64,000 nucleotides of DNA from Diadema antillarum (GCF_040938485.1 NW_027271251.1:1426001-1490000), one strand, 5' to 3'; shown: positions 14,104-56,755, numbered from the stretch's first letter. The notes: generated from the letters alone by a model not told the origin. Made by a program: numbers and translations.

Positions 14104-14401
14104 ATGGGGAATAAGGCCTCTGCCTCGGCGAGCATAAGCGTCGAGGCATCGGCTGAGGCCGATGTGGCGGCGGGGGAGCCAGTGAAGAAGAAGAGGCGCC
14201 TCAGTTTCAACCGCGTCCTCAATGCCTCATTCCGTCGATCAGGCCGGGGTCGACGGAGTAAGCGCAAAGCAGGACGCAGTGACGAAGGGGGCGCTAAAAT
14301 CAGCGTTGGAGCCGAGGCACCGAAAGTCGACATGGACATCGGAACGCCAGACAGCACTAAAATCGGAGTGGGCGGCAACCTCGGTTTGGGGGCAAATGCT
14401 G
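14104..14401 (+). CDS. Coding exon 1 of the AHNAK-like gene (MGNKASASAS...LGANAG), with an N-myristoylation signal and a basic cluster
   Basis: ATG is in good context (AGCATGG), with an in-frame stop upstream at 14077-14079. The region is CpG-rich. The peptide (EAPKVDMDIG, GVGGNLGLGANAG) matches the composition of the giant exon. The donor G|gtaagc at 14402 is phase 1. Confidence 0.75.
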
Positions 14402-17400
14402 GTAAGCCATCTTCTACTTTGTTTATCACATTTTGTGTGTATTTTATATCTTATATTGTCATGTAAATAAAAAGACACAAGAAAAGTTTTATGTGCGTGG
14501 CATCGCGAGAGCTGCGCTACGAGTGGCCAGCGAGGGCCACTCCAAGTCCGCGAAAGAAAGTCGACACAATTAACGTGCCCAATTCACAGGGGTGCTCGGG
14601 TGGGCTCGCTCCGCTTCACACAACAAAAAAGTCGATTTTACTGGTAAGGAAACTTGCGCGCTTTGTGTAATTAAGTCCGGAGTGGCGTATAGTCGAGTAG
14701 TTTGAAGGAATGTGGCGACGAGGCGAAGATCGACGAGGCGGATTAGCCCAGCCCATCCTAGCGATGTGACGCTCACTCCTATAAGATCATTTTTCGAGCA
14801 GTCCCTCTCCTGGACGCCAATATGCAGTGCTGCCGTGGCTCCCTGACATCTTCTATACGATTAGGTATGTTTTTTCTCCATCTTTGCTCTCCAATCAGAT
14901 TTTCTAATTTTGCTCTCTAAAACTTTCTATGAAGTTGGTTCTTTGGATATACTGTATGTCTGAAGCGCTTATTGCAATGTGAGGTCTGTACAACATTAAT
15001 ATGTTGTATGTGATAGGTGAGTTAAGAGCGTGCTCCTCCTCCCTTCACCATTTAAGGATTCTACTTATAACCGTAACCCGAGGGTACAATTTTTTTTCGC
15101 GCCTTTCCGATATCAATAGTTTTGCGAAGGATTTTGTTTAGTGACCCTAATATCATAATGCGCAGCAATGGCGCCCATTTTTGTCCTTGGTTGTGCTGTA
15201 TAGAATGGCAATACTGTTTTTTTTTTCTTCCCAGTCCCATTATAGTCTTGGTAGTTTGTGAGCGATCCATTCTTCGCGGTTACTGAAGAAGAATGGATGT
15301 TATCCATCGATGTAAGCACGCGGGTCGATACTACTTTGCCCCAGGTACAAGCACGCCATGTACACTTTACCAGCGCACTACCGCGTCCACCGAAGTTGGC
15401 GGTAGTCAGCGCATTCATGTCAGAATATGCCAACATTTAGCAGATCTGATGTGAGGACTGTGTTATTTAAATGTTCTGATCAACCCACGAGGGAATTGTC
15501 TGTCACATTGCTCGAAACAGGGGTTGTTGACTCTTCTTCCTCTGTAAAACTTTTACCCATGTATTTTGCCCTCCCCCCGATGAAGTGGTATGTTCCATTG
15601 ACACGCCCTGCTACTTGTTGCACGCTGTCAAGTTTTGTACAAGCGAAGTTACCCGCGGTGTGCATGGCGTGTTTGTAAGGGCGAGGAAACTACATGCATG
15701 TTGGTGTACTGAATGGCAGCTCTGTTTTCGCTTTGGATCAGAACTACCACGAAGGGTTCTCTCAAAATACACTTGAGTAGAGATGAATCAAGTAGGGCTA
15801 CTTGGCGCTCTTAGCTTGTATATTTTATGCTCTTCTGTTGCTCGATTTTCAGTCTTTTTTCAGAGTTTTAGCGAGTATAATAAAAGTCGGTGAATGGTGA
15901 CGAGAAGCTGCAACTTGGTGAAAATCGGGAGGTAAAATTCATATCCTCTCATTGGGTTCCCTTTGAGACTTTCGGATAGAGTTGTAATAACTCTACATGT
16001 AATATTCCATTTTCCCCATTCCCGATGACACGATCGCATCACGGCAAAAATGTCTTCCAAAATGTCATCTACTCTGCAAATTACCTTTCCAGTTTGTAAG
16101 TAGCTCTTATAAAGGGATGGTATTAGTATTAGTTGAGGTGAGGATTCAGCTTTTAACTTTTTGCGACTCCATGAAATCTTAAAGAGCATGCAATTCTACG
16201 AGGAATTCAAAGTATATTTGATGAAAATTGGTTTTGAAATGGCTGAGATATCCAAAAACAAAGTAAAACAAAGTAATCCTAATAAATGGTCGGTCCCACC
16301 TTTTATTAGAATCACTTTATTTTGGATATCTCAGCCATTTCAAACCCAATTTTCCTTAAAAATATTAACCAACAAACTTTGAATTCCTGTTAGAATTATG
16401 TGCTCTTTCATATGTCGTGATAGATTTAATCGACGTGAAGGACACAACATCCATTAGTTGAAAAAGAAAATCTGCATGACCAAACAAACCGTCTCTGGGA
16501 TGACTTTAAATTCAGTGTTACTCATGTCGTTTACTCGTTGGTATTCCACCGTTTATTAACAAAATCGACAATCGATGTTCATGAGGTCGGTCTGACGATC
16601 ACAAGGAATACAATTTGTGCAATATTAATTTTAACCATTATGATTTTATTCTGATATTAGGTCCTGTCATGAAGAATAAACACAAGTCTTTGGTACCAAG
16701 CAGTTGCATTCATAGTTTTGTCGAGTCGACATGACTCTGTCTTGAGTAAACCCCCTGCTGAAGTGTTGGCCCCATTTTGCTAACTCGATGTGGAGGTCAT
16801 AATTCTGAGACCATAACGCGCGGGTGTATTACACCTCAACCCCCTCAAATTCACTAATATCCCTGATGAGAGAAGTAGGAAAAAACAACAGGAACAACAA
16901 CCAAACAAAAGAAAATAATGTGTGACTGGCTTCACAAATTCTGCGATATTAAAAGTTAAAGCTCCCTATTCGCGGGATTGAATCCTCTGCAGCGATATGA
17001 AGTATAAATACGTCTAGAAGGGTTATTGATCCATGAGGCGATATGGATCCGTAAACGTCACGTTATCCTAAATGACTTATCTTTGTATAAGATAAACAGA
17101 CAAGTAAACAAAACATGCACACATTGGATGTGCCGTGCCATCACAGTGGAAAAAGGAGATACATTTACACGTTCTACCTCCCTTTCCATTACGCCAACCT
17201 TCAGCCCTCTCTTGTAACTTGTAAGGGACATTGAGACCTCAATAATTCACTTTTCGAATCTGAAGCTACTAAGTGTGTGTTCGTTAAATAGTGATGCATC
17301 ACACAAACGTGTCTGCCATCATGTTGGAATGCCTACTAGGTATGAAATCTGGAAATGTCCCTCAATCTGATTTCGTTTATTAAGGTCTTTTCCATCAAAA

Positions 17401-20400
17401 AAGATCAAAATAAAAACTCGGATATTTTCTATTGATTAGTTTCGTTGGACTCATGTCACATCGTTTCACGCATCAGTTGTTTATAGTAAAATGTTGGCAA
17501 TGCATGACAATATATCGTGTTTTTTTTTATTAAAATGACGTATAGATTGAATCAATATCTGATGTGATTGAACGTGAAACGTAATTCCACTGCAAGTATC
17601 CATGGAGTGTCTTAATGGTTACCATCGAGGCTATTTGAATTTACCCCTGGGATATCAACGTTATGTAAATGATAATAAAAGTGATTGATAATGATAATTG
17701 TATTGCATTTGCACAAAAGAAAAATTCTGCTTCAACTGTTATGGTGATCTTTGTGTGTGTAATGGGGGAGGGGATATCTAAGGGGGCTACTATAGTCATT
17801 CTTAGCTTCATACATCAATACAAGTGGAAACCATATCAATCTATGATAAATGTTTGATGGTTGACGTCGATATAAAGAGTAGGCCTACTCTATTCTTCCT
17901 TCGGTATCTATTGGGACAAGAATGAAAATCGTATCATCTTTTTTTTGACGTATAAGGAGAGATACTGACAGTCCGATTAGATATAGTACAGCAAACTTTT
18001 TTTTTTCGACTTTGACCTCCGGTTCAATCCTGTTTCCTATACTTCCATGTCACGCCCTTTCCTTGCCGTTTTAATATCACACCCATGACTAGAATATTTG
18101 ATTCTCCATCCTGCTGTGTTTTGTTAGTACCGTGTAGTCTGACATTCGAACCTGCCCGTATGCAGTCGTGTCTCTTTCTACTGTATAAAAAGCGTTTTTA
18201 AACGCTCCTAATCTATAGTAAATGGGAGCTTAATTATACCTGTGAATACCCACTGATTTTTCCGTTGGCCGTCAACTTGCTCTATCAACTACTAGTAGTA
18301 CATGTACTTTTTGAAGATTTGTATTTTTAAAGAGAAGAGAAAAGTCATGGCAGCAGATCCACGCGGTGCATGGAGGGATAAAAGGGCATCTCCCCCCTTG
18401 AGACGAAACAACAATATTTTGATTATAAAGGCTAGGGCGTTCGCTGAAAGATAACATCATAAATATGTCATTCTTTACCACCCAAAAGTTAGTGACTAGT
18501 ATGTAGGACCCTACACACGAGTTACCGACACACCCAGTGCAATGCGACATTCGCTTCTACCAGGGAGGTGACTGCGTTGCCTCGGAGGTCTCGTGCAACA
18601 TGGACGTCAGCGCCCTAACTGTCATAACTGAAATTATTATCCCATACTGGCACTTATCCACTGTAATCCGACTTCTTGCGTGAACTTAAATTTGATTGTA
18701 GAATTTAAGTATAAACGGGAAAGCGATTACTCATCATCTCGATTGCTACTTGTAAAAAATTGAGGTCAAACTTGTCAGTAGTGACTTAAAATATGTATTT
18801 TCCCAATGTCTGTTTGGCGAGGATGGTGTTACCACAATGTGGTACTCTCATCGTTTAGATTGTGATGACGAACCATGTCAAGGTCGATCATCGGAACGGG
18901 TCTGTACTAGATGTGCGATGTGTTTGATGCACGCAACAGTCATTTGGAGAACCAATATAGGATACGAAATGCCGAGAAGCAAGTGTCTTTCTTACACTGC
19001 AAATTAGAGCTCGAAAATCAGTTGGGTCTTCACCTCTCTGAAATGCGCACGACATCGCCTGCTAACAAGTTTCAATTTTGAGGAATTCCAGGGTCGTGGG
19101 TTCGAGGTCAAAAGGACCAGACGGATGAGTTCGCTGCAATCACTCGGCACTTCATCCACATCGTCCTCAGCGGGCTGGCGATGCAACCTCTGACCGGAGA
19201 TTATCCCCAAGCCTGCTATTTCACCCGTCGGATGTGATGTACAACCCGCAAGTCTCCGTCCCCTTTCGTGTACTAGTACAATGCTTCATACAAATACCAC
19301 GAGCGCTGCAATGGTGAAAATCATATTTTTTTAAATCACATGCTTATGGGCGTGAGGGAGGGGGGGGGGGTGTGTGGAAGGGGTGAGTGAACCCTTGATC
19401 AAGAGCCAATTATGCAAGACAAGATGCCACAAAGACCAATTCATTTTGCATGAACGTAGTGAGACAAAGAAACCACCAATGGAGAGGAATAAGAATTATT
19501 GAAGAAAAAAAAAAGGAAAAAGAATATCACGTGTGAGACAGCAGAAAATACTTTGATGAAACTCATGCTATCTTAATTTTTTTTTTGCCATTGAACCGCT
19601 CTCACTCCTCCCACACACAAAAAATGTTGTGTATAGCTGCAATGTCGCTTGCTCATTACTCTTTCGTCCATTAGCCTTTTGTGTTTTTATGTCTGTTTGA
19701 AATGTCACGAATATCACATTTAGGGGTTCTACTTGTCATACATGTATTACACTGTGATGTATCATAAATCACACCAATTCCGCTGCAGAAAAACTAAACC
19801 TAACGAAGATTTATTCTTATGAACTGGTGATCAATCATTTGCCGTTTTCCATAAAAGAAAAATTGTGTTTACGTGCATGTGTGAATATACCAAAAACTAC
19901 ATTTCTGTAAATAGTTTAAATTTCGGATCACCCGAACGATACTTGATGTCCATATTGACAGTCAAACTGCCGGTATAATCAACTTCTGTTAAACTGGTTT
20001 GTTGGATTTCGCATGAACTTTTGCTGGCTTGTGTCTGTGTTACGATAAGGTTCACAATAAAGTTAAAAGAAATCAGCTGATATTTATGTGGTAACTAGAA
20101 TGTCAATATGTTTATGTTCCAAATAAATTTGACATAGATTTCGGGCAAAAATTATTAGACATGTTTTGTGTCATAAAACATAAGAAATGTATAGGAATTT
20201 ATTGATTTAAGGCGGAGCGCAGCCCCAGAACAAAGTAAAACAAACAAAAACTGATTAACAATAAGCTAATCACCGCTTGAAACCAAGTAGTTTTCTATAA
20301 CGCGTAAATTGTTTAAGTTCCTGCAAAGTATAGTATATTTTTTTCCTATACTTTTTTATGATATGACACGAGGGTAAGAAGCAGGTAGCAATAATTAGTG

Positions 20401-23400: not shown

Positions 23401-23596
23401 AATAAGCTAGCTTGGGGTTAGCTCATGTGCGCATGTGTACAAAATACGACCTTCCTTTTTTTTCTCACGTTGTTAGGCACTTCACTCGAATTAAAAGCGA
23501 TAAATGCAATTTGCTTGTCCGACGTAACATTTATGGAATTCATTAGCCATGTTCAAACAAAGGATAAACTTGCTTGTACCAGATGGCCAGAATGGT

Positions 23597-23664
23597 CCAT
23601 CCCTTTTCTGTTGATATTGTCAATTACCACCATCCTTTTTCTGTTGATATTGTCAATTACCACC
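23597..23664. repeat. 33-bp direct tandem duplication
   Basis: ccatcc(c/t)ttttctgttgatattgtcaattacca occurs twice, head to tail. Confidence 0.85.
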
Positions 23665-23812
23665 TTTGCTGTCAGGTGGATGTGCTAGCAAGCATCATTT
23701 ATAAAGATTTACTTGGATAACCATGAATGAATTTGTAAACCAGCATAAATGACCCTTTTCTGCCTATGCGCAAAGCGGCACCCCGAATTGACTTTCACTG
23801 GGGAGACGTTAA

Positions 23813-24631: not shown

Positions 24632-24635
<4 letters not shown>

Positions 24636-24674
<39 letters not shown>
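24636..24674. repeat. (TG)n microsatellite
   Basis: Read directly from the sequence. Confidence 0.9.
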
Positions 24675-48400: not shown

Positions 48401-51400
48401 AAAGTAGGTGGCAAGTTTGGATTTGGCTCTGGAGAGGCAGATGTAACTCCTCCATCAGTGGACATTGAAGGTGATATTGATGCCGATGGTAAAGGGGGTG
48501 CAGTTCCTGAGGTAGATGCTCCTGAAGGTGGCTTTGGCCTGAAGTTTGGGAAGAAAAAAGGAAAGAAAGATGGATCTGGAAAGAAGGACAAGAGTGGCAA
48601 GTTCAAGATAGGAGGAAAACTTGGATTTGGTGCTTCAGGAGGTAACAACATAGATGTAAAGGAACCTGAAGGAGCCGTCTCTCTACCATCAGCAAAAATT
48701 GACATTGGCGGGACAGATGCAGATGCTGGGCTACATATAAAACCTGAAGTTGATGCCACCATTAGATCCAGCAAACCAGATGTTGATGGGGATGTTGACA
48801 TCAAACTACCGGAGAAACCAGACATTAATATTGGAGGTGTTGGCAAACTTGATGGGGGTAGGGGTATAGATGTCAATGTTGGAGGAGTCGGCATGGATTT
48901 TGACAAAGCAAACATGGCAATTGATGGAAAAGGTGGCCTTGAAAGCAATGTTGGACTTGGTGGAGTGGATGTTTCTGCAGATGGTGGCAAACAGGATTTT
49001 AATCTTGGTGGAGTAAGTGGTATAGATGTCAATATGCCTGATGTGAAAGTGGGAAAAATTGAAGGAGGACTTGGGGTGGGTGGTGATGTGGATCTGAATG
49101 TTGATGGGGCTGTGACTGGACCCGATATCAAGGAAGAGGCAGATGGCAAGGGGAAATTTGGCTTCGGATTTGGATTTGGAAAATCAAAGGACAAATCAAG
49201 CACTTCATCAAGCAGCAGCAGTAGTAGTAGTAGTAGTTCAGACTCCAGTGATTCCGAAGGCAAGAAGAAACACAAAAGACACAAAAAGAAAAAGAAAGGC
49301 AAAAAAGGATTTGGATTTGGATTTGGATTTGGAGGGAGTGGGGATGCTGAGAAGGAGATTGATATTGGAGGCGGAGTTGATTCCTCTGGAAAAGGAAGCA
49401 TAAAGCCTGGTTTTGAAATTGATATGGAAAAACCAGATTTTAAACCAGAAGGAGGGATGAGTGTTGATTTTGGCGGTGGAGTGGATGTTCCCAGTGCAAA
49501 GATAGATGGTGAAAAATCAAATTCACAGATAGGTGGCTTTGGCGTAAATATTGGAGGAGGAGTAGGAGGTTTAGGCTTTGATGTCAAACCAAATGTTGAA
49601 GTTGGAGAGCATGAGGGAAAGGGTACAGGAATTGGAGGAGATGCTGGAATGGACTTCAATGCTGGATCTGGAATGAGGGTGGATAGTGACAAGCCAGATG
49701 TGAGCATTGGCAAACCTGAAGGTAGCATTGGTGGCAACTTGGGAGCAGGCTTTGGAGGAGGTCTTGGCGGAAGCACTGGTGGTAGTCTTGGAGGTGCTGG
49801 AGTGAGCTTAGATATTGACAAGCCAGATGTCAACATTGGCAAACCTGAAGGTAGCATTGGTGGAAACTTTGGAGCAGGCATTGGAGGAGGCCTTGGCGGA
49901 GGTGCTGGAGTGAGCTTAGATATTGACAAGCCAGATGTCAACATTGGCAAACCTGAAGGTAGCATCGATGGAAACTTGAGAGCAGGCATTGGAGAAGGTC
50001 TTGGTGGAGGTGTTGGAGTGAGCTTAGATATTGACAAGCCAGATGTCAACATTGGCAAACCTGAAGGTAGCATTGCTGGCAACTTGGGAGCAGGTTTTGG
50101 AGGAGGTCTTGGCGGAAGCACTGGTGTTAGTCTTGGAGAAGGCGCTGGAGGGAGCTTAGATATTGACAAGCCAAAAGTCAACATAGGCAAACCTGAAGGT
50201 AGCATTGGTGGAAACTTGGGAGCAGGCTTTGGAGGAGGTCTTGGTGGAAGCACTGGTGTTAGTCTTGGAGAAGGCACTGGAATGAGCTTAGATATTCAGA
50301 AGCCAGATGTCAACATTGGCAAACCTGAAGGAAGCATTGGTGGAGACCTTGGAGCAGGCATTGGAGGAGGTCTTGGCGGAGGTGCTGGAGTGAGCTTAGA
50401 TATTGAGAAGCCAGATGTCAACATTGGCAAACCTGGAGGTAGCATTGGTGGAAACTTGGGAGCAGGCTTTGGAGGCGGTCTTGGTGGAGGCACTGGTATA
50501 AGTCTTGGAGAAGGCGCTGGAGGGAGCTTAGATATTGACAAGCCAGATGTCAATATTGGCAAACCTGAAGGTAGCATTGGTGGAAACTTTGGAGGAGGCA
50601 TTGGAGGAGGTCTTGGCGGAAGTGCCGGAGCGAGCTTAGATATTGACAAGCCAGATGTCAATATTGGCAAACCTGAAGGAAGCATTGGTGGAAACTTGGG
50701 AGCAGGCTTTGGGGGAGGTCTTGGTGGAAGCACTGGTGTTGGTCTTGGAGAAGGCGCTGGAGTAAGCTTAGATATTGACAAGCCTGATGTCAACATTGGC
50801 AAACCTGAAGGAAGCATTGGTGGAGACCTTGGAGCAGGTATTGGAGGAGGTCTTGGCGGAGGTGCTGGAGTGAGCTTAGATATTGACAAGCCAGATGTCA
50901 ACATTGGCAAACCTGAAGGTAGCATTGGTGGAGACCTTGGAGCAGATATTGGAGGAGGTCTTGGAGGAGGTGCTGGAGTGAGCTTAGATATTGACAAGCC
51001 AGATGTCAGCATTGGCAAACCTGAAGGTAGCATTGGTGGAAACTTGGGAGCAGGCTTTGGAGGAGGTCTTGGTGGAGGCACTGGTGTTGGTCTTGGAGAA
51101 GGCGTTGGAGTGAACTTGGATATTGACAAGCCTGATGTCAACGTTGGCAAACCCGAAGGTAGCATTGGTGGCAACTTTGGAGCAGGCATTGGTGGAGGTC
51201 TTGGCGGAGGTGCTGGAGTGAGCGTAGATATTGACAAACCAGATGTCAACATTGGCAAACCTGATGGTAGCATTGGTGGAAACCTTGGAGCAAGCATTGG
51301 CGGAGGTCTTGGCATTGGCACTGGAGCTGGTCTTGGAGAAAGCGGTGGAGTGAGCTTAGATGTTGACAAGCCAGATGTCAACATTGGCAAACCTGAAGGA

Positions 51401-54400
51401 AGTGTTGACGGGAACTTTGGAGCAGGCTTTGGAGGAGGTCTTGGCGGTGCAGATGTCAACATGCCAGATATCAATGCTGGAGGTGTCTTTTCTGGTCTTG
51501 GAGGTGTTGGAGTGAATGTTGATTCTGTCAAGCCAGAGTCTGATATCAGTGTGAAAGCTCCATCACTGTCAGGAGATGGAGATGCCAATGTCAGCTTAGG
51601 TGGTGGTATCTCTGCAGATAAGGATTTTTCTTCCAACATTCCATCAGCATCCATTGGTGGCAGAGATGGAGCTGCTAATGTAGACATTGGAGGTGGCATA
51701 GGCTTTAGCATAGGCGGAGTAGGTAGTGCTGATGTGGCAGGTGATGCTGGTGCAGATGCAGGTGCTGCTTTCAAATTAGGAGTACCAGAAGGCAATATTA
51801 GTGTGGGAGGAAGCACAGGAATTGAAAAAGATGCAAAGCACAAGAAACACAAGAAGGGGAAAAAACAACATAAAAAAGATAAGGACAAGAAGGAGAAGAA
51901 AGAAAAGAAGGAGAAGAAAGAAAAGAAGGAGAAAAAGAAAGGATTTAGTCTTCTTGGAGCTGTCGGCATTGGAGATGATTCATCAAGCTCTTCCTCCTCA
52001 TCATCATCATCTTCTGACTCAGATGACGGCTTCTTCTCGAAGATCAAAAGTGCTGTTGGACTCTCTTCTGATTCTGATAAAGAAGACAACCCTAACTCAA
52101 ACAACAACAATAGCAACCTCTGCAATGTCAACAACAACAATTCCGAGGATGGTCCAGAAGAAGAAAATTATAACAACAATGCCAATGATGATGAAGCTGG
52201 AGCTGTTGGTGGAGACAACAAACATTCGAAACTCGATGGGAAGCATAAAAAGGAGTCTACCGACAAGGTTAAGAGGCGAGGTTTTGGAAAGCTCTTTGGA
52301 GGCAAGAAGAGGTCACGCGATGTCATGCTGGAAATTCCAGATCAATCAGCAGATGGAAGACCTAGTGACGAGCAGAGGAGACCTCTAGCAGAAATTCAGG
52401 AAAGCACAGAGAAATTGCAATCACAGCCAGTGGCTGCAGAACCTCCACAGTACTCAAAAGCAGAATTTCTTGCACACTCCAATGCACCAGAAGTGGAAGT
52501 GCCCAAATATAAAAATAAGAAAAGGAGAGCACCTCAACCCCCTTCTGAAAGACCTGCCACAGTAGAAGACTCCATATCAGAGGGTTCCTGGCCATCAACA
52601 GCTTCCTTAGAATCAATGTCATCAGCAGCATCGAAAATAAGAACATCCCTAACTTCTCAGCAGCTTCAAGACAGGAAAATACTAACAAGAGAGTCTTCAG
52701 TGTCTTCAGATGTAATGGTAAGTTCTTCCTATGGTGAAGTTGCGTGTGAACACCCTCATCCTGCACAACCCTCCCCAGTGGTAGAAAATGCACATGTGTT
52801 GTCTGTCGAGTCTGTTCCAGTCACTTGCCCCAGTGTCACCTCCCCCTTGCTGACAACTGGTCATAAAGACGAGCAAAGCAAGCATGGCAGCAATATGCAT
52901 GAAATTTATGAAGTTGTCAAGAGTATGCCCCTTCCCTTTGGTGCACCACCCCCTAAACCAAAACGTGTGCATGTTTCTGCTGAAACTGACCCCCTTGATG
53001 AAAGTACTGCTGTGTGTGATATGTTAGATAAGTCTTTTGCAGTGCCTGAACAAATACCTTCTAGTCAGTCTGTTGTAGAAGAATCATCTCTTCCAGGTAT
53101 GGATATACATGCAGCTGCAAACCAACCCAAACCAACAAGTGGACTCCATTTGAAACCTGACAAATGGCAATCAAATTCCCGTGATTCTCTTCTTGGCGAG
53201 ATCCTCTTTGAATACTCCAGTGGAAATGTGTCTTCCCCATCAGAAACTGTGAATGTGTTCCCATCAGAGGATGTGGGCATCTCTCCAGTGCACTTGCCTG
53301 AGGTTGTGAAAATGCCTAACATCCCAAAGGAGGAGATAAAGAGTGAACTGCCTTCCATCACCATGGAGGAAGCATCTCCAAATGAATTGCAGCCAAGTGA
53401 GACTACCAAGCTCACAGGGGAAATAAGCACCATAGATGACGATGTTGACTTGCCTTGTCCTGAAAATCAGGAAGAGGTTAATGAGATACAAGATGGTGAT
53501 TCTCAGCCTACTATCCGGCGAAAGTCAATATCCCTAAAGAGTCATGATAGGGAAACAGAAGGAATATCTCTTGCTGTGCAAATGGCTCGAGGAGCTGCTG
53601 TACTGAAACGTGACCGCACAGCTGACAACAGGAGATTGCTTCGGGAGGGACTGTCTCAGTTGATGGGTGCTCCAATGGACATGGTTGGTTTCAAACCAAA
53701 AGCAGATTTTGAGCCTGTGAATGATGTTGGAAATGATAATGAAGGACTGAAAGTCTCACGAGAAGTTGCACAAAACAGTATTGCAAGTAATCATAACAAC
53801 CAGAAGAACCCACAGGAAGTTGCACAAGACAGTGTTCTGAGTGATCATGGAAAACAGGAGAGCTCACAGGTAGTTGCAGAAGATATTGTCATGAGTGATC
53901 TTGGAAAACAGGAAAGCTCACAGGAAGTTGCACAAGACAATGTTGAGAGTGGTCATGAAGAACAGAGGGGCTCACAAGTTGTCGAACAGGACCATGTTGC
54001 AAGTGATCATGAAGAACTGAACGACACACAAGATGAAGCAACTGGTAACATGAAGGTTAAGTCACAGCTATATTTTTCTGAAGAGAAAAGACTTTCAACT
54101 GAATGTGGAGAGTTGTCAAAAAGAAGCAAGCATAATGGAGAGAAAGTTGCAAAAATCATGGTAGATGATCGTGAAAACAAAGATGGTCTAGATGTCATCA
54201 CAAGTTCAGATGTGCTGAAAACACAAGGAACAGAAGAGCAAGAATGCAGGCAACCTGATTCACTAGATCAGACACAATCACCCTCACCTGCTCCCAAGAA
54301 AAGTGCATGGGACATTGTTCGAAGTAAATACAGCAGTGACTTCACTTCAAAACGTGATGTTGATCAAGGATCCACTGGAAGAGGAAAGCATTTGACGCAG

Positions 54401-56755
54401 GATCAAAAAGAACTAGCCAACTTAGCTAGACGCAGTGTGGTGAAAAGCACCTTAAACATGTTTGGTAGTGACAAAGTAAAGACTGATCGTGCTAGTAGTA
54501 CAAGCAAATTACCCGAAAACAGAGATGACATATCTGCTTCACAGATAGCTCAAACCAAAAGTGAAGAGAAGAAAAGGGGTCAGTCCAGTATGAAGGAAAG
54601 TGACAAAATTCATCTTGCTGCAAACAAAGATGTGAACCCTTGGAAGGATGTTCTGAAAAAAAGGAATGTGACTGAGAAAAAGTCTGACAGAGAAAGAACC
54701 AATCCCATGCCAGATGTTTGGTGGAAAGAATCACTAGTAAAGCGGAAAAGTTCCAAAGTTAAGAAAGAAGTGAAAGAGGAACTCCAGGCAGAAGAAAACA
54801 AAAGTGCTATTTCAAATGTAGCAGAAAACAAGATCGGCAGTCCGAAATCACCAAACCTAGATCCAGTGCCATTATCCAACCAAAAAGAGCCAAGTGATTT
54901 TTTGAAAAAAACTGTTGACAGGAAAGAGGAAAGTGAAGAGAGTGAATATTCTAAGGTTCCAGATAAATCACAGGTCATTCCCTGGAAAGAAGCTCTTAAA
55001 AAGAAGAAAGCTGAAGCAGAAGTAAAGAGAAAATCGTATGTTGATCCTCGAAGGAGGGCAGAAGAAGAGCACGAAGAGGAGCATTTTAACTTGATTATGC
55101 AGGCACGGAAAAATATCCGACGCTTTTCCAGGAATACAAGTGATGTTACCTCTCCAGCTGTAGATATTTCCACAGATGTTGTCATTCAAAAGAACACTGG
55201 TATTTCTTCCCCAGTTGAAGACCCCATCCCTCCAGCGGCTAAAGTAGCTGTTGCCACCGGAGATAGTAATGAAAATAGCACAAAACACAACATAGAACTT
55301 CCCGCAGTAGATATGGGTGATGATGATATCACAGACAGTCAGAAGAGCAAACTCCTTAAGAAGCCAGAAGATGACATGAAGCTGGACACTTCTGAAATCC
55401 TGTCAGATCAGTCTACAGACGACACAAAGGAAAAGGCTCAAAGGTTGCAGAGCATGAAGCAGAATGTAGCAGCATCGAGTGTTGAGAGAGCAAATAATAT
55501 GGATGACTCGCAGCATCTAAGTCGCTACCGTCAGATTCATCAGCGAACTCAGAGTATCTTATCAGTCATCAGGGCACAGCAGTCACTTGCCAATGTGCGG
55601 TCAAACCATCCAGGAAGCCAGAGTGAGATGCCAAAGACTGGAGATGATTCTACTATCACCCTGAGAGACAATGAGGCACGGATGAGATTGCGTGAAAAGA
55701 GAAGAAAAGCGAGATCCAGTCCAAACATTGATTTTGATATGACAGCCTTGAGAAACCTCATGAATGAAAAGGAGCGCAAAGCAGAAGAGACTGATGCTAC
55801 GCTCACAGATGCTTCAACAGTGGGAACCAAATGGAGTGGATCTCAAAGCCTTTCATCTCAACAGAGGTTTGTGCGGAAGCAGAAGAAAAAAACATATGGA
55901 ATGAGAAGAGGAATTCCCCTTGGCAGCTCAACAGAAGATTTGTCAGACAGAGATAGTTCATCAGAAAATGACATGTCTGATGTCTCGACAACAACAGTTG
56001 TTCCAAGAGTGCAAGATTCTGGATTTTCTGATATTTCATCCTCTGTTGAGCCAGACTCATTAATTTCAAGCACCAAACTTTCCCAGAGGGTATATGGCAA
56101 TACCAGAGAAAGCACTGTGACACTGGAAGAAAAGCTGTTTGGCAAAGTTAAAGGAAAGGGCAAGACCCTTGGCTCAGATAGAGTTGGCCGAGCTCCGTCA
56201 TTGAAGGAATCTGCAACTATGTCTGCCTCTCTTACCAACCTAGCTACCCAGCATTCTGCTAGTGACGAGTCCCTCCCAGATGATGTGAAGGAATTCATGG
56301 CCATGGACAGGGCAGATCTCCAGCAACTACTTCTGCAACAACAACAAGAGATGCGACTCCTGCGCCAGCAGATGCAAGCAGTACAACTCCAGGCTGTCCA
56401 GACTCCAACCAACCCACCTTCTGTCACCTCTAACATCCCTACCCAACCTACACAGACTACTGTCCCAGGCCTTCCTTACATGTTCCCCCATCCTAGCATG
56501 GTCATTGCTCCCACCACCTCTGGAATGGTCCCTCCTGTACAGCAGCCCATGTTCTATGTCCACCCTCGCATGCCACACAGTATGCAAATGCCTAGTATGT
56601 ACCAAATGGGCAACTTTCAGCCATATCCTCCTGTACCTTTTCCTATGCAGGGTCACCCTATCACACAAGCCATCCCAGGCAGTCTGCAGCCTGTTCCAGT
56701 CCCACCAGGGTCCACTATCTCTCCGGGGACGCCTGAACAAAGACTAAGTGAATGA
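38804..56755 (+). CDS. AHNAK-like: Giant exon, 3' segment (~5,980 aa): AHNAK-like repeat arrays plus a unique C-terminal region
   Basis: The frame is open from AAC at 38804 (NFGGGGRGGGDIDVDANIKKP...) to TGA at 56755. It continues the interrupted repeat unit exactly. The track's start at 38843 is an internal GTG (Val). Confidence 0.95.
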   Translation, partial: NFGGGGRGGGDIDVDANIKKPDVDIEGDVKLPSGGVEGGIDVDAKGPDADLSVDGPNLDVSGGGDIDVKGSGKSKGGFGFGLKMPKFKGPNFGGGGHGSGDIDVDANIRKPDVDADIAKPEVDVNVKTAKPDLDVGGGVALHAGGDMDVKGPDVSASVDGPDMDFDGKGKKKGGFSFGVKMPKFKGPNFGGGGRGDIDVDASIKKPDVDVEGDVKLPSGGIQGDVDINAKGPDADLSVDGPDLDVSGGGDVDIKGKGKKKGGFGFSWKMPKFKGFNFGGGADADIDVDADVKKPDMDIKTDANLPSGGIEGGVDVDVKRPDPDLSVDGPDAKISGGRDVDIKGSGKSKGGFGFGLKMPKFKGPHFGGGGHGSGDIDMDANIKKPDVDVEGDVKLPSGGIEGGIDIDAKGPDADLSVDGPDLDVSGGGDIDVKGSGKGKGGFGFGLKMPKFKGPHFGGGGHGSADLDVNADIAKPEVDVNVKTAKPDLDVGGDVKLPSGGLSLDAGGDIDVKGPDVDASLDGPDMDVSGGVDMDVDGSGKKKGGIGFGLKMPKFKGPHFGGGGHGSGDIDVDANIKKPDVDVEGDVKLPSGGIEGGVDINAKGPDADLSIDGPDLDVSGGGDIDMKGNGKSKGGFGFDLKMPKFKGPNFGGGGHGSADLDVDADIAKPEVDVNVKTAKPDLDVGGDVKLPSGGLALDAGGDIDVKGPDVDLSVDGPDLDLSGGGDIDMKGSGKGKGGFGFDLKMPKFKGPNFGGGGHGSADLDIDADIAKPEVDVNVKTAKPDLDVGGDVKLPSGGLALDAGGDIDLKGPDIDASLDGPDMDVSGGVDMDVDGSGKKKGGFSFGVKMPKFKGPHFGGGGRGDIDVDADIKKPDIDVEGDVKLPSGGIEGDVDINAKGPDADLSIDGPDLDVSGGGDVDIKGRGKKKGGFGFGLKMPKFKGPHIGGGLHGSGDVDVDANIKKPDVDVEGDVKLPSGGIEGGIDVDAKGPDADLSVGGPDLDVSGGGDIDLKGSGKKRKGFSFKLPKFKFPHFGGHGSADIDVDGKVKQPDVDIEGDANLPSGGIKGGIDVDAKGPDADLSVGGPDLDVSGGGDIDVKGSGKSKGGFGFGLKMPKFKGPNFGGGGHGGADIDMDANIKKPDVDVEGDVKLPSGGIEGGVDINAKGPDADLSVDGPDLDVSGGGDIDRKGSGKGKGGFGFGLKMPKFKGPNFGGGGHGGADIDMDANIKKPDVDVEGDVKLPSGGIEGGVDINAKGPDADLSVDGPDLDVSGGGDIDVKGSGKSKGGFGFGLKMPKFKGPNFGGGGHGSADLDVDADIAKPEVDVNVKTAKPDLDLGGDAKLPSGDIDVKGPDVSASLDGPDMDLNGKGKKKGGFSFGVKMPKFKGPNFGGGGHGDVDVDANIRKPDVDVEGDVKLPSGGIEGGVDINAKGPDADLSVDGPDLDVSGGGDIDRKGSGKGKGGFGFGLKMPKFKGPHFGGGGHGGADIDVDANIKKPDVDVEGDVKLPSGGIEGGVDINAKGPDADLSVGGPDLDVSGGGDIDRKGSGKGKGGFGFGLKMPKFKGPHFGGGGHGGADIDVDANIKKPDVDVEGDVKLPSGGIEGGVDINAKGPDADLSVDGPDLDVSGGGDIDVKGSGKSKGGFGFGLKMPKFRGPHFGGRGHGSGDIDVDADIKKPDVDVEGDVKLPSGGIEGGVDINAKGPDADLSVDGPDLDVSGGGDIDRKGSGKGKGGFGFGLKMPKFKGPHFGGGGHGGADIDVDANIKKPDVDVEGDVKLPSGGIEGGVDINAKGPDADLSVDGPDLDVSGGGDIDVKGSGKSKGGFGFGLKMPKIKGPHFGGGGHGGADIDVDANIKKPDVDVEGDVKLPSGGIEGGVDINAKGPDADLSVDGPDLDVSGGGDIDMKGSGKGKGGFGFDLKMPKFKGPNFGGGGHGNADLDIDADIAKPEVDVNVKTAKPDLDVGGDVKLPSGGVALDAGGDIDVKGPDVDTSLDGPDMDVSGGVDVDVDGSGKKKGGFSFGVKMPKFKGPHFGGGGRGDIDVDADIKKPDVDVEGDVKLPSGGIEGGVDINAKGPDADLSVDGPDLDVSGGGDINAKGSGKSKGGFGFGLKMPKFKGPHFGGGGHGGGDIDVDADVKKPDIDAEGDIKLPSGGIEGSVDINAKGPDADLSVDGPDLDVSGEGDIDLKGPKLKGRGSGKKKGKFGFGLKMPHFGFGGNGDAEIDGDKLDIDASVKKPVVNVGGNLDLPKAEGDISGPNLNVDGPDGKVNITGNIGGDADINIKPETDISIKAEKPDLDIGGKGSLGGEVLTGNVGADLDGPDADLEADFKGTKGKKGSKGKGKFKFGLNLGTPSFKLGGKGHEPDANLSGGADVDGPDVHISAHGKADGPDISPRGDSNLPSASVSGSVDAPDSGWGFGKKKKYKISGGSKKDKGFGIGGKFKVGGDGSGDASLHAPDVNIGGNVDGDGSITVDGKKDISAPDADIKLGVKGGKKKKKKGKKFRLGGFKLGFGGSDEHTSSSESSSSSSSDEGDGKGGFGFGFGGRKGAGDIGAGLSVDVKGPDVDASGNVPQGKGGLSVDKPDVSIGGGGISGGFGLGGNVDIDKPDVDVDGNLRGPSAGLSVNAPDIAGGIGKAGLGGVLPSGSLSLGGGDVSGPEVNIEGKGDLSGGIGGIGGIGVGMGGAASLPDGSASLPSADLGAGGKAGLEIGGGGLDGAGAGLDADIAIPKGNLSFGTSGGIAAPAGDLSVEKPEFDIGGKASHDLDVDIKKPDGPDAQVNLGGGGFSLGSAKLEAGLDVVKPEADINIKSSRPDIGVDGNDGVNVEAPDVDLDIEKPKADIGFGIGIGGKKKGSGKKGKGGGFHFGKMKLGGGGKGHVNGDAELPDPSVSGKIAAPDVSGDLEGDANLKATTEVPGLNVTVDVPDKDIDVKGPELDTPSGGIGFGFGKRSKKGGSGKKDKKGKFKIGGKLGFGGSGSADVDPEADISLPSGEVSADIDTSAKLEGDLDIKTAKPSIGGEAELKAPNISLDGGADGNLDMPSDGVKIGSGGKIKGKGKKKGKGGFGLGGLKIGFGGKDTSSDSSDEGKTGLNIGLKGPDVNLDDVNVNGDSGLKVGGDINAPSTDVNIGGGLDMGGGADVSVKPSADINVRSNKPEMNIGGAILGGDVKEPDMDVKGPEIDIPSGGIGFGIGKKGKTGSGKKDKKGKFKVGGKFGFGSGEADVTPPSVDIEGDIDADGKGGAVPEVDAPEGGFGLKFGKKKGKKDGSGKKDKSGKFKIGGKLGFGASGGNNIDVKEPEGAVSLPSAKIDIGGTDADAGLHIKPEVDATIRSSKPDVDGDVDIKLPEKPDINIGGVGKLDGGRGIDVNVGGVGMDFDKANMAIDGKGGLESNVGLGGVDVSADGGKQDFNLGGVSGIDVNMPDVKVGKIEGGLGVGGDVDLNVDGAVTGPDIKEEADGKGKFGFGFGFGKSKDKSSTSSSSSSSSSSSSDSSDSEGKKKHKRHKKKKKGKKGFGFGFGFGGSGDAEKEIDIGGGVDSSGKGSIKPGFEIDMEKPDFKPEGGMSVDFGGGVDVPSAKIDGEKSNSQIGGFGVNIGGGVGGLGFDVKPNVEVGEHEGKGTGIGGDAGMDFNAGSGMRVDSDKPDVSIGKPEGSIGGNLGAGFGGGLGGSTGGSLGGAGVSLDIDKPDVNIGKPEGSIGGNFGAGIGGGLGGGAGVSLDIDKPDVNIGKPEGSIDGNLRAGIGEGLGGGVGVSLDIDKPDVNIGKPEGSIAGNLGAGFGGGLGGSTGVSLGEGAGGSLDIDKPKVNIGKPEGSIGGNLGAGFGGGLGGSTGVSLGEGTGMSLDIQKPDVNIGKPEGSIGGDLGAGIGGGLGGGAGVSLDIEKPDVNIGKPGGSIGGNLGAGFGGGLGGGTGISLGEGAGGSLDIDKPDVNIGKPEGSIGGNFGGGIGGGLGGSAGASLDIDKPDVNIGKPEGSIGGNLGAGFGGGLGGSTGVGLGEGAGVSLDIDKPDVNIGKPEGSIGGDLGAGIGGGLGGGAGVSLDIDKPDVNIGKPEGSIGGDLGADIGGGLGGGAGVSLDIDKPDVSIGKPEGSIGGNLGAGFGGGLGGGTGVGLGEGVGVNLDIDKPDVNVGKPEGSIGGNFGAGIGGGLGGGAGVSVDIDKPDVNIGKPDGSIGGNLGASIGGGLGIGTGAGLGESGGVSLDVDKPDVNIGKPEGSVDGNFGAGFGGGLGGADVNMPDINAGGVFSGLGGVGVNVDSVKPESDISVKAPSLSGDGDANVSLGGGISADKDFSSNIPSASIGGRDGAANVDIGGGIGFSIGGVGSADVAGDAGADAGAAFKLGVPEGNISVGGSTGIEKDAKHKKHKKGKKQHKKDKDKKEKKEKKEKKEKKEKKKGFSLLGAVGIGDDSSSSSSSSSSSSDSDDGFFSKIKSAVGLSSDSDKEDNPNSNNNNSNLCNVNNNNSEDGPEEENYNNNANDDEAGAVGGDNKHSKLDGKHKKESTDKVKRRGFGKLFGGKKRSRDVMLEIPDQSADGRPSDEQRRPLAEIQESTEKLQSQPVAAEPPQYSKAEFLAHSNAPEVEVPKYKNKKRRAPQPPSERPATVEDSISEGSWPSTASLESMSSAASKIRTSLTSQQLQDRKILTRESSVSSDVMVSSSYGEVACEHPHPAQPSPVVENAHVLSVESVPVTCPSVTSPLLTTGHKDEQSKHGSNMHEIYEVVKSMPLPFGAPPPKPKRVHVSAETDPLDESTAVCDMLDKSFAVPEQIPSSQSVVEESSLPGMDIHAAANQPKPTSGLHLKPDKWQSNSRDSLLGEILFEYSSGNVSSPSETVNVFPSEDVGISPVHLPEVVKMPNIPKEEIKSELPSITMEEASPNELQPSETTKLTGEISTIDDDVDLPCPENQEEVNEIQDGDSQPTIRRKSISLKSHDRETEGISLAVQMARGAAVLKRDRTADNRRLLREGLSQLMGAPMDMVGFKPKADFEPVNDVGNDNEGLKVSREVAQNSIASNHNNQKNPQEVAQDSVLSDHGKQESSQVVAEDIVMSDLGKQESSQEVAQDNVESGHEEQRGSQVVEQDHVASDHEELNDTQDEATGNMKVKSQLYFSEEKRLSTECGELSKRSKHNGEKVAKIMVDDRENKDGLDVITSSDVLKTQGTEEQECRQPDSLDQTQSPSPAPKKSAWDIVRSKYSSDFTSKRDVDQGSTGRGKHLTQDQKELANLARRSVVKSTLNMFGSDKVKTDRASSTSKLPENRDDISASQIAQTKSEEKKRGQSSMKESDKIHLAANKDVNPWKDVLKKRNVTEKKSDRERTNPMPDVWWKESLVKRKSSKVKKEVKEELQAEENKSAISNVAENKIGSPKSPNLDPVPLSNQKEPSDFLKKTVDRKEESEESEYSKVPDKSQVIPWKEALKKKKAEAEVKRKSYVDPRRRAEEEHEEEHFNLIMQARKNIRRFSRNTSDVTSPAVDISTDVVIQKNTGISSPVEDPIPPAAKVAVATGDSNENSTKHNIELPAVDMGDDDITDSQKSKLLKKPEDDMKLDTSEILSDQSTDDTKEKAQRLQSMKQNVAASSVERANNMDDSQHLSRYRQIHQRTQSILSVIRAQQSLANVRSNHPGSQSEMPKTGDDSTITLRDNEARMRLREKRRKARSSPNIDFDMTALRNLMNEKERKAEETDATLTDASTVGTKWSGSQSLSSQQRFVRKQKKKTYGMRRGIPLGSSTEDLSDRDSSSENDMSDVSTTTVVPRVQDSGFSDISSSVEPDSLISSTKLSQRVYGNTRESTVTLEEKLFGKVKGKGKTLGSDRVGRAPSLKESATMSASLTNLATQHSASDESLPDDVKEFMAMDRADLQQLLLQQQQEMRLLRQQMQAVQLQAVQTPTNPPSVTSNIPTQPTQTTVPGLPYMFPHPSMVIAPTTSGMVPPVQQPMFYVHPRMPHSMQMPSMYQMGNFQPYPPVPFPMQGHPITQAIPGSLQPVPVPPGSTISPGTPEQRLSE
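49679..51449 (+). repeat. Coding tandem array 2: 15 Gly-rich units of mostly 36 or 44 aa (SLDIDKPDVNIGKPEGSIGG...GGGLGG)
   Basis: agcttagatattgacaagccagatgtcaacattggcaaacctgaagg recurs at 108-nt or 132-nt spacing. Confidence 0.95.
53759..54025 (+). repeat. Coding array 3: five degenerate 18-aa units (QEVAQDSVLSDHGKQESS type)
   Basis: caggaagttgcacaagac recurs 108 nt apart (two 54-nt units). The five units align by eye. Confidence 0.8.

What the first reader, a model, noticed from the sequence alone, without database searches (positions are those of the whole stretch)
14104..56755. ~7,000-aa AHNAK-like scaffold built as myristoyl anchor + two repeat arrays + unique C-terminal tail, from three small exons and a 20.3-kb exon
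Seen: the phase-compatible four-exon model, a 20,326-nt last coding exon, and motifs matching AHNAK central repeats. Established: vertebrate AHNAK, AHNAK2 and periaxin share the layout of small 5' exons plus one giant exon, but they begin with a PDZ-like domain. Inference: this is an AHNAK-type cortical scaffold with a different design, using lipid anchoring instead of PDZ and adding a second array and a ~1,500-aa tail I cannot match to AHNAK. An ORF caller sees only disconnected pieces and misses the N-terminus 22 kb upstream.
Basis: partly seen in the sequence, partly recalled or inferred. Interest (0 to 1): 0.75.

Follow-up and report, generated by a model that had tools for sequence, protein, structure and literature searches.

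The report
Sea-urchin lipid-anchored AHNAK-like giant protein
This is a real, spliced sea-urchin gene for a roughly 6,960-residue, mostly disordered repeat protein whose repeats resemble those of the vertebrate giant scaffold AHNAK, but which starts with a conserved fatty-acid-anchor signal instead of AHNAK's PDZ domain and ends in a tail found only in echinoderms.

Summary
The four-exon model is real. All splice sites are canonical. One spliced contig from a related species joins 32321 to 35257 and 35348 to 36430, and its loose 5' end equals the last 30 bases of exon 1.

The 20.3-kb exon is not one ORF in this assembly. An extra T at 38803 splits it into 979 plus 5,983 codons. The same scan noted this break separately.

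Both repeat arrays and the 1,500-aa tail exist. A profile of the 90-aa unit hits vertebrate, Nematostella and arthropod AHNAK proteins strongly, and hits no shuffled or reversed control.

Two AHNAK features fail. The window holds no PDZ exon, and the repeats lack the lag-7 periodicity that vertebrate AHNAK repeats show.

The start MGNKAS plus KKRRLSF..SFRRSGRGRR recurs in two other assemblies. The tail has relatives only in echinoderms, and the Strongylocentrotus purpuratus model XP_011671119.1 is a tail-only fragment of the orthologue.

Verdict: a new variant of a known kind. It is most likely a membrane-tethered, disordered cortical scaffold; that function is inferred, not shown. Interest is moderate.

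The parts
14104..14401 (+). Exon 1, 99 codons + 1 nt. It starts MGNKASAS (N-myristoylation pattern), followed by a basic cluster KKKRRLSF..SFRRSGRGRRSKRK.
   Evidence: ATG has A at -3 and G at +4. An in-frame TAA lies at 14077 and the donor is GTAAGC. The PROSITE-type pattern matches; residues 25-60 hold 15 K/R against 2 D/E. The motif recurs in P0085 and L003. The loose end of the X1 spliced contig equals 14371-14400.
14402..32147 (+). Intron 1, 17.7 kb.
   Evidence: GT..AG ends. Its two ORFs of 160 aa have no Pfam hit. tblastn finds no PDZ-like coding there.
32148..32321 (+). Exon 2, 174 nt, Gly/Ala-rich.
   Evidence: The spliced contig covers 32147-32321 and joins 32321 to 35257, GT..AG.
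35257..35348 (+). Exon 3, 92 nt.
   Evidence: The spliced contig covers 35257-35347 and joins to 36429/30, GT..AG.
36430..38802 (+). Exon 4, part before the frame break, 791 codons. It holds degenerate AHNAK-like motifs, a poly-Ser/acidic cluster at 36787-36840, and the first units of array 1 from about 38290.
   Evidence: Frame 1 is open over 36397-38802. Translation. Differences from organism A fall at third codon positions in 23 of 35 listed cases, p = 9e-5.
38803..38803 (+). Extra T that shifts the frame (cccTaac) and creates TAA in frame 1.
   Evidence: Sister units read cccaac or cctcac. The 5,983 codons downstream stay open in frame 2.
38290..45480 (+). Repeat array 1: about 25 units of 88-103 aa (KMPKFKGPxFGGGGHGSGDIDVDAxIKKPDVDVEGDVKLPSGGIEGGVDINAKGPDADLSVDGPDLDVSGGGDIDVKGSGKSKGGFGFGL).
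   Evidence: TRF period 264-309 nt. Unit alignment. The unit HMM scores 470-540 bits against AHNAKs and nothing against shuffled or reversed controls. AF2 gives pLDDT 34 for three units.
45481..49650 (+). Middle region: degenerate Gly/Lys/Asp modules (GFGFGKKxKxGSGKKDKKGKFKIGGKLGFG) with poly-Ser/acidic clusters at 46340 and 49205.
49668..51482 (+). Repeat array 2: about 14 units of 36 or 44 aa (DIDKPDVNIGKPEGSIGGNLGAGFGGGLGG...), 35% Gly.
   Evidence: TRF periods 108/132/240/480 nt. Anchors spaced 36/44 aa apart. A similar Gly-rich array lies upstream of the tail in L002.
51812..52144 (+). Linker: a Lys/Glu-rich run (KKEKKEKK...), a poly-Ser/acidic cluster and an Asn-rich stretch.
   Evidence: Conserved in S. 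purpuratus P0084 and in L002.
52145..56755 (+). C-terminal tail of about 1,540 aa plus the stop codon. Non-repetitive and mostly disordered, with conserved blocks: RRAPQPP (52517-52549), LPFGAPPPKPKR (52928-52966), DSGFSD (56015-56032), helix 55505-55603, helix 56279-56395, and a Pro/Met/Gln-rich end.
   Evidence: No Pfam hit. Only six representative relatives among 1.84 billion; of the two that carry a source name, both are echinoderm. Conserved blocks. AF2 gives two helices at pLDDT about 90 and the rest below 50.

Best explanation
The window holds one gene of a sea urchin. Three small exons and a giant exon of about 20.3 kb encode a protein of about 6,960 aa with no signal peptide and no transmembrane segment.

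Shown:
- The splicing pattern of all four exons.
- Purifying selection on the reading frame.
- Motif-level similarity of the repeats to AHNAK repeats from cnidarians to vertebrates.
- No PDZ-coding sequence anywhere in the window.
- Recurrence of the MGNK[AT]SAS start and its basic cluster in two other assemblies.
- Conservation of the tail, and of its position after the repeats, in other echinoderms.

Inferred mechanism:
- The N-terminal glycine is myristoylated during translation. Together with the adjacent basic cluster (KKKRRLSF..SFRRSGRGRR, which carries RRxS-type phosphorylation sites) it holds the protein on the inner face of the plasma membrane. Phosphorylation could release it, as in a MARCKS- or Src-type myristoyl-electrostatic switch.
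- From that anchor, about 5,000 residues of acidic/Gly-rich disordered repeats extend as a long flexible cortical spacer. They are punctuated by basic-hydrophobic KMPKFKGP and GFGFGL motifs and by poly-Ser/acidic clusters.
- The echinoderm-specific tail would recruit partners through short motifs: two SH3-type PxxP sites, a DSGFSD site, two isolated helices (one coiled-coil-like) and a Pro/Met/Gln-rich end.

The single-base frame break at 38803 is most likely an assembly error or a very young allele, because about 6,000 codons stay open after it.
For: - Exon junctions: canonical sites; the spliced contig of a related species joins exons 2-3-4, and its loose end equals the end of exon 1.
- Coding constraint: 23 of 35 listed differences from organism A fall at third codon positions (p = 9e-5); organism B has an in-frame 84-nt deletion; 5,983 codons stay open after the break.
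- AHNAK-like repeats: 77 hits, nearly all named AHNAK or AHNAK2. The unit HMM scores 470-540 bits against shark, frog, medaka and Nematostella proteins and nothing against globally shuffled, locally shuffled or reversed controls. The block KMPKFKGPxFGGxGxSGDIDV is shared with Nematostella.
- No PDZ: Pfam finds nothing in any piece, and tblastn with five PDZ domains finds nothing in the 64 kb.
- Anchor: the pattern MG[^EDRKHPFYW]xx[STAGCN][^P] is met, 15 of 36 following residues are basic, and the maximum hydrophobicity is too low for a transmembrane helix. The start recurs in P0085 and L003, with an in-frame stop just upstream in L003.
- Tail: the S. purpuratus XP_011671119.1 and Apostichopus proteins are relatives; L002 shows a Gly-rich array, linker and tail in the same order.
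- Disorder.
Against: - Myristoylation, membrane location and every partner are predictions from sequence motifs. No tool here tests them.
- The supporting transcript comes from a related species, in a run whose RNA nature is only a guess. No RNA run of the window's own species was found.
- The contig carries about 880 nt upstream of the ATG that I could not read, so an upstream coding exon is not strictly excluded.
- The exon-1 homologues in other assemblies are not linked to repeats within 10 kb.
- The repeats lack the lag-7 periodicity of vertebrate AHNAK repeats, so the similarity could be partly convergent.
- As assembled, the gene ends after 979 aa.
Confidence: 0.6

Rival explanations
1. 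The resemblance to AHNAK is convergent. This would be an echinoderm-specific disordered repeat protein that arrived independently at D-x-D-x/Pro/Gly/Lys-rich repeats and a KMPKFK-like motif, with no common ancestry with AHNAK.
For: Neither PDZ, nor the N-terminus, nor the tail is shared with AHNAK. The lag-7 hydrophobic periodicity of shark and frog AHNAK repeats is absent. Single-unit scores against vertebrate AHNAK are modest at 16-23 bits. HMMER bias terms are very large.
Against: Reversed and locally shuffled controls with the same composition score nothing. Alignments span 60-70 of the 90 unit positions. A block of about 20 residues is nearly identical to the Nematostella unit, at 31.7 bits per unit. 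The layout of small exons plus one giant exon is the same as for AHNAK and AHNAK2 (PMC10682155).
Confidence: 0.2
2. The gene is a pseudogene or null allele in this individual. The frame break at 38803 would be real, so only a 979-aa N-terminal product, or none, is made from this haplotype.
For: The assembly shows TAA at 38803 in the frame set by exons 1-3. The extra base is not a simple homopolymer-length change.
Against: 5,983 codons remain open after the break, which is impossible for an old lesion. The tail is conserved as far as S. purpuratus and more distant echinoderms. At most this is a recent allele, not loss of the gene in the species.
Confidence: 0.12
3. Two genes rather than one. 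The repeats and the tail would be separate proteins, as in the S. purpuratus annotation, where the tail stands alone as a 1,728-aa model.
For: XP_011671119.1 and four other database proteins of 1,146-1,524 aa hold only the tail. In L001 and L002 the tail sits in its own exon.
Against: In the window the frame runs without a stop from array 1 through array 2 and the linker into the tail. P0084 begins inside the Gly-rich region and linker, so it is a truncated model. L002 has the array, linker and tail in the same order and strand, 1.2 kb apart. The short proteins come from ORF callers or fragmented assemblies.
Confidence: 0.05
4. A secreted acidic, Gly-rich matrix protein, for example for skeleton formation, rather than a cytoplasmic scaffold.
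For: The composition (24% Gly, 17% Asp in array 1) recalls acidic biomineralisation proteins. This is a resemblance recalled from general knowledge, not tested here.
Against: There is no signal peptide and no hydrophobic segment anywhere; the maximum 19-residue Kyte-Doolittle mean is 1.17. The N-terminus is a conserved MGNKAS start followed by a basic cluster.
Confidence: 0.03

Closest known systems
Vertebrate AHNAK / AHNAK2 (and periaxin)
   Same: A giant, mostly disordered protein encoded by a few small 5' exons plus one exon of 17-20 kb. It has a central array of roughly 100-aa units rich in D-x-D-x, Pro, Gly and Lys, with the M-P-K-F/L/M-K motif. A unit profile from this gene matches AHNAK proteins at 470-540 bits (PMC10682155).
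   Different: No PDZ domain. Units are 88-103 aa rather than 128 or 165 aa. The lag-7 periodicity is absent. The N-terminus is a myristoylation signal plus a basic cluster. There is a second, Gly-rich array. The C-terminal 1,540 aa are unrelated to the AHNAK C-terminus.
Invertebrate proteins auto-named 'AHNAK' or 'AHNAK-like' in NCBI annotation: Nematostella vectensis P0019, Daphnia P0052/P0058/P0062, Armadillidium P0054/P0071, Dermatophagoides P0047
   Same: The closest repeat match is to Nematostella, at 36% identity over the array, 31.7 bits per unit and the shared block KMPKFKGPxFGGxGxSGDIDV. These proteins also appear built to sit on a membrane. Nematostella and Daphnia start with a signal peptide plus a transmembrane helix, and the isopod protein starts MGNVES.
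   Different: The Nematostella and Daphnia proteins carry PDZ domains after the transmembrane helix; this one has none. No N-terminal or tail similarity was found to the Nematostella protein, the only one of these compared directly.
S. purpuratus XP_011671119.1 (uncharacterized LOC105441578) and other echinoderm tail-only models (Apostichopus PIK61489.1; P0079-P0083)
   Same: Orthologous or homologous to the linker and tail: 53% identity overall and 70% over the last 420 aa to the S. purpuratus protein, with the same C-terminal residues.
   Different: Those database entries lack the N-terminal exons and both arrays. They appear to be truncated models, or ORF calls on fragmented assemblies, of the same kind of gene.
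MARCKS / Src-type myristoyl-electrostatic switch
   Same: An N-terminal MGxxxS signal followed by a Lys/Arg cluster with Ser residues flanked by Phe (KKKRRLSF..SFRRSGRGRR). This is an analogy in mechanism only.
   Different: No sequence homology was tested or claimed. In MARCKS the basic effector domain lies mid-protein and the protein is small.

Membership tests
AHNAK family (AHNAK, AHNAK2; periaxin as relative) | N-terminal PDZ domain | tested here: not met
   Pfam finds PDZ in shark, ray, Nematostella and Daphnia AHNAKs but in no piece of this gene. tblastn with five PDZ domains finds nothing in the 64-kb window. The spliced contig shows no extra exon between exons 1-4.
AHNAK family (AHNAK, AHNAK2; periaxin as relative) | Central array of about 128-aa (AHNAK) or 165-aa (AHNAK2) units with sequence similarity to the AHNAK repeat | tested here: inconclusive
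   Similarity is met: E = 0 to shark AHNAK and 26-36% identity; the unit HMM scores 470-540 bits and controls score nothing. Unit length differs, at 88-103 aa.
AHNAK family (AHNAK, AHNAK2; periaxin as relative) | Seven-residue periodicity of hydrophobic and Pro positions within the repeats. That this defines the family is recalled knowledge; the periodicity itself was measured here in two AHNAKs. | tested here: not met
   Hydrophobic autocorrelation at lag 7 is +0.28 (shark) and +0.45 (frog), against -0.01 in array 1. Only the lag-2 alternation (+0.27) is shared.
AHNAK family (AHNAK, AHNAK2; periaxin as relative) | Gene layout of several small 5' exons plus one giant exon that encodes the repeats and the C-terminus | tested here: met
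   Three small exons plus a 20.3-kb exon. The layout of AHNAK and AHNAK2 is taken from PMC10682155.
AHNAK family (AHNAK, AHNAK2; periaxin as relative) | AHNAK-type C-terminal domain of about 1,000 aa with its interaction sites | tested here: not met
   The tail finds no protein of 3,300-10,500 aa, the range that holds the AHNAKs. An exhaustive search of its last 1,200 aa gives six relatives, none an AHNAK; of the two that carry a source name, both are echinoderm.
N-myristoylated proteins | Initiator Met followed by Gly2 in the pattern G-{EDRKHPFYW}-x(2)-[STAGCN]-{P} | tested here: met
   MGNKASA matches. MGNKASAS and MGNKTSAS stand in two other assemblies. In-frame stops lie upstream, in the window at 14077 and in L003.
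N-myristoylated proteins | Covalent myristate on Gly2 in vivo | not testable with these tools
   Needs metabolic labelling, mass spectrometry or an NMT assay.
Echinoderm 'tail' family (S. purpuratus LOC105441578-like) | Conserved blocks FGKLFGGKK, YSPAEFLP, KKRRAPxPP, LPLPxGAPPPKPKR, RERTQSIL, STPNID, DSGFSD, LQxxxLQQQQEMRLLRQQMQ and a Pro/Met/Gln-rich end | tested here: met
   Alignments A2 and A3 of six to seven proteins. The E-value is 1e-121 to P0084 over the first 700 aa.

The most novel reading that the evidence does not exclude
AHNAK-like repeat proteins would be an ancient family, predating the cnidarian-bilaterian split, of giant disordered scaffolds that are permanently tethered to the membrane. 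Only the repeat body would be conserved, while the tether was exchanged several times: signal peptide, transmembrane helix and PDZ in Nematostella and Daphnia; a myristoyl-plus-basic switch in echinoderms and an isopod; PDZ alone in vertebrate AHNAK. Echinoderms would in addition have fused the body to a lineage-specific, motif-rich tail. That would make membrane tethering, not PDZ dimerisation, the ancestral core of AHNAK function.
Probability: 0.3. Interest if true: 0.6.

Novelty: new variant of a known kind. Interest (0 to 1): 0.45.

Why it matters
AHNAK proteins are studied almost only in vertebrates, and their mechanism is still unclear. The review read here treats the family as two members (PMC10682155).

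An echinoderm relative that keeps the repeat body but swaps the PDZ head for a conserved lipid-anchor signal, and the tail for a different motif-rich one, suggests which part is the functional core. Sea-urchin embryos would let membrane tethering of such a scaffold be tested with simple reporters.

Practically, the gene is badly annotated. The word search found no full-length model in the protein database, and the S. purpuratus entry is a tail-only fragment. Expression and proteomic studies in echinoderms therefore probably split or miss this gene.

Tried and rejected
- Pfam on all coding pieces: no hit.
- Sequence search of the repeats and of a tail profile against solved structures: nothing usable.
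- Word search of the tail among proteins of 3,300-10,500 aa: blank.
- BLAST of exon 1 and of the tail against the Nematostella AHNAK: only chance matches.
- AF2 on three units of array 1: pLDDT 34, so no fold search was run.
- AF2 on the last 420 aa: only two helices, so no fold search was run.
- Search for exons 2-4 downstream of the exon-1 homologue in L003: none within 10 kb.
- Other genes in the window: none found upstream, in intron 1 or downstream. The many long minus-strand ORFs over the giant exon are shadows of its skewed codon usage.
- RNA runs of the same species: none listed.
- Literature: no paper on an echinoderm or other invertebrate AHNAK-like gene structure. There is only a holothurian single-cell study that names an 'AHNK' transcript as an epithelial marker.
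- Rejected readings: a secreted matrix protein (no signal peptide), two separate genes (continuous frame), and an old pseudogene (about 6,000 open codons after the break).
Every search used single exons, or the two pieces of exon 4, by reference.

Full report
**Observation**

The window contains one long gene on the + strand.
- The four proposed exons have canonical signals. Exon 1 (14104-14401) begins at an ATG with A at -3 and G at +4, has an in-frame TAA 27 nt upstream, and ends at a GTAAGC donor.
- Exons 2 (32148-32321), 3 (35257-35348) and 4 (from 36430) follow pyrimidine-rich AG acceptors. The three junctions keep the frame.
- The claimed 20,326-nt exon is not one ORF. Frame 1 is open from 36397 to 38802 and stops at TAA 38803. 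Frame 2 is open from 38795 to the stop at 56753.
- Comparison with sister repeat units shows one extra T (gggacccTaacttt against gggacccaacttt). The four exons add up to 20,890 nt, which is 3n+1.
- Without that base the product would be 979 + 5,983 = 6,962 aa.
- The same scan had noted this break as a separate finding on this window (s1-229858).

**Transcript evidence**

No RNA run of the same species was listed. I laid four related runs on 32000-37900.
- Run X1 (organism A) matches at the 90-95% level. It holds a 2,261-nt contig that covers exon 2, exon 3 and the first 819 nt of exon 4. The contig skips exactly 32321 to 35257 and 35347/8 to 36429/30, both GT..AG.
- The loose end of that contig before 32147 is 30 of 30 identical to window 14371-14400, the end of exon 1. 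All three junctions are therefore seen in one molecule, with no exon in between.
- Runs X2-X4 (organism B) cover the introns as well, so they are DNA. They carry an in-frame 84-nt deletion in exon 4.
- Of the 35 listed differences between the window and organism A in exon 4, 23 fall at third codon positions (p = 9e-5). That shows purifying selection on this frame.
- Caveats: the RNA nature of X1 is the tool's guess, though intron-less GT..AG joints argue for it. The contig also extends about 880 nt upstream of the ATG, which I could not read.

**Anatomy of the protein**
- Exon 1 gives MGNKASAS, then a Ser/Ala stretch, then a strongly basic segment KKKRRLSFNRVLNASFRRSGRGRRSKRK, with 15 K/R against 2 D/E in 36 residues.
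- Exons 2 and 3 are Gly/Ala-rich.
- Exon 4 starts with degenerate motifs and a poly-Ser/acidic cluster.
- Array 1 follows (about 38290-45480), with about 25 units of 88-103 aa in two subtypes.
- Next comes a middle region of degenerate Lys/Gly modules with two more poly-Ser/acidic clusters.
- Array 2 (49668-51482) has about 14 units of 36/44 aa and is 35% Gly.
- A Lys/Glu-rich, poly-Ser and Asn-rich linker leads into a non-repetitive tail of about 1,540 aa.
- No 19-residue stretch is hydrophobic enough for a signal peptide or membrane helix; the maximum Kyte-Doolittle mean is 1.17.
- AlphaFold2 predicts three units of array 1 as fully disordered (pLDDT 34). The last 420 aa are predicted disordered except for two helices at pLDDT about 90. 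Both alignments were shallow, so this is weak evidence.

**Relation to AHNAK**
- A word-indexed search with array 1 returned 77 proteins of 3,300-7,500 aa, nearly all named AHNAK, AHNAK-like or AHNAK2. They come from sharks, rays, frogs and fishes, and also from Nematostella, Daphnia, an isopod and a mite.
- To separate order from composition, I built an HMM of the 90-aa unit. I searched twelve of these proteins together with their globally shuffled, 30-residue locally shuffled and reversed versions.
- The real proteins scored up to 542 bits, and none of the 36 controls gave a meaningful hit.
- Alignments span 60-70 of the 90 positions. The Nematostella unit shares the block KMPKFKGPxFGGxGxSGDIDV, at 31.7 bits per unit. 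The similarity is real at motif level.
- Three features of vertebrate AHNAK were tested and failed:
  - There is no PDZ domain in any piece or anywhere in the 64 kb, whereas Pfam finds it in the vertebrate, Nematostella and Daphnia proteins.
  - The hydrophobic autocorrelation at lag 7 is +0.28 and +0.45 in shark and frog AHNAK but -0.01 here.
  - The tail is unrelated to AHNAK.
- The gene layout of small exons plus one giant exon agrees with the layout described for AHNAK and AHNAK2 (PMC10682155).
- I therefore call it AHNAK-like: a relative or parallel of the repeat body, not an AHNAK orthologue.

**The N-terminus**
- MGNKASA fits the N-myristoylation pattern.
- A word search with exon 1 alone found two ORFs from other assemblies. 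P0085 reads MGNKASASMDVS...AAKKRRLSFKGLRNSFRRSGRGRRS. The L003 locus reads MGNKTSAS, has an in-frame TAA two codons upstream and a GT donor at the equivalent exon end.
- Gly2, Ser6, KKRRLSF and SFRRSGRGR are invariant at 50% overall identity.
- I could not link those exons to repeats, because nothing lies within 10 kb downstream. That is unsurprising, since intron 1 here is 17.7 kb.
- The pairing of a myristoylation signal with a Ser-containing basic cluster is the design of myristoyl-electrostatic switches such as MARCKS and Src. This rests on general knowledge and is an analogy only.
- In the database, the Nematostella and Daphnia AHNAK-like proteins begin with a signal peptide and a hydrophobic helix before their PDZ domains. 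The isopod protein begins MGNVES. A built-in membrane tether seems common among invertebrate members.

**The tail and the organism**
- An exhaustive HMMER search of the last 1,200 aa against 1.84 billion representatives gave only six proteins.
- One cluster contains S. purpuratus XP_011671119.1 (1,728 aa, uncharacterized LOC105441578), and another is from Apostichopus japonicus.
- The S. purpuratus protein aligns from the Gly-rich region before the linker to the very last residues (...GTPEQRLSE). Identity is 53% overall and 70% over the last 420 aa. It is a truncated model of the orthologue.
- In a more distant assembly (L002), a Gly-rich array, a Lys-rich stretch, a poly-Ser cluster and an Asn-rich linker precede the tail by 1.2 kb on the same strand. 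The fusion of repeats and tail is therefore shared by the echinoderm assemblies examined.
- The window thus comes from a sea urchin other than S. purpuratus.
- Conserved tail blocks include two PxxP motifs (KKRRAPxPP and LPLPxGAPPPKPKR), DSGFSD, two helices (RERTQSIL... and PDDVKEFM...LQQQQEMRLLRQQMQ) and a Pro/Met/Gln-rich end.
- There is no Pfam family and no solved relative.

**Explanation and rivals**
- The best reading is a cytoplasmic, lipid-anchored, mostly disordered giant scaffold of the cell cortex. The anchor and the partners are inferred.
- Convergence of the repeats (0.2) is not excluded.
- A real null allele at 38803 (0.12) would not change what the gene is.
- Two separate genes (0.05) and a secreted matrix protein (0.03) are contradicted by the continuous frame and by the lack of a signal peptide.

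**Novelty**
- Vertebrate AHNAKs are well known, and invertebrate 'AHNAK-like' names exist only as automatic annotation.
- I found no paper on their architecture. The only mention is an 'AHNK' epithelial marker in a holothurian single-cell study.
- The word search returned no full-length model of this gene in the protein collection.
- This is a new variant of a known kind, of moderate interest.

All searches used single exons, or the two pieces of exon 4, by reference. The N runs at 60069-60220 and 60961-61102 were left alone.

Noticed in passing
window 38797-38812: A single extra T (cccTaac) breaks the giant ORF into 979 and 5,983 codons. The same scan already lists it as a separate finding (s1-229858).
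   Followed up: partly
window 37377-37462: The DNA contigs of related organism B (runs X2-X4) lack 84 nt here, which is 28 codons and in frame. This is a length polymorphism or divergence inside the coding exon that respects the frame.
   Followed up: no
P0019, P0052, P0058, P0062, P0054, P0071 (database proteins): Invertebrate proteins auto-named AHNAK start with membrane-tether signals. Nematostella and Daphnia have a signal peptide plus a hydrophobic helix before their PDZ domains. The isopod protein starts MGNVES. Fish AHNAK-like and AHNAK2 proteins start MCDCFHL.
   Followed up: partly
P0084 (S. purpuratus XP_011671119.1): This public model of 1,728 aa is only the linker and tail of the orthologous giant gene. 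It begins inside the Gly-rich region.
   Followed up: yes
L001 427-5100; L002 2-1453 and 2669-7150: In a more distant echinoderm lineage the tail lies in its own exon. It is preceded by an acceptor-like ...TVTVQ junction and separated by about 1.2 kb from the exon with the Gly-rich array and linker.
   Followed up: partly
window 36787-36840 (also 46340, 49205, 51974): Four poly-Ser/acidic clusters (S10-12 followed by D/E), each next to a Lys-rich run, divide the protein into modules. The first one attracts very deep 31-nt contigs in all runs, as a simple repeat would.
   Followed up: no
window 14071-14079: A minimal upstream ORF (atg ctg taa) lies 33 nt before the main ATG. Its stop is the in-frame stop that closes the frame upstream of the start.
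   Followed up: no
window 36387-52140, minus strand: More than a dozen long minus-strand ORFs (up to 969 aa, 47368-50277) overlap the giant exon. They are shadows of its skewed codon usage (GC skew +0.3 to +0.4), not genes.
   Followed up: partly
window 60069-60220 and 60961-61102: Two runs of N (152 and 142 bases) lie in the AT-rich region downstream of the gene.
   Followed up: no
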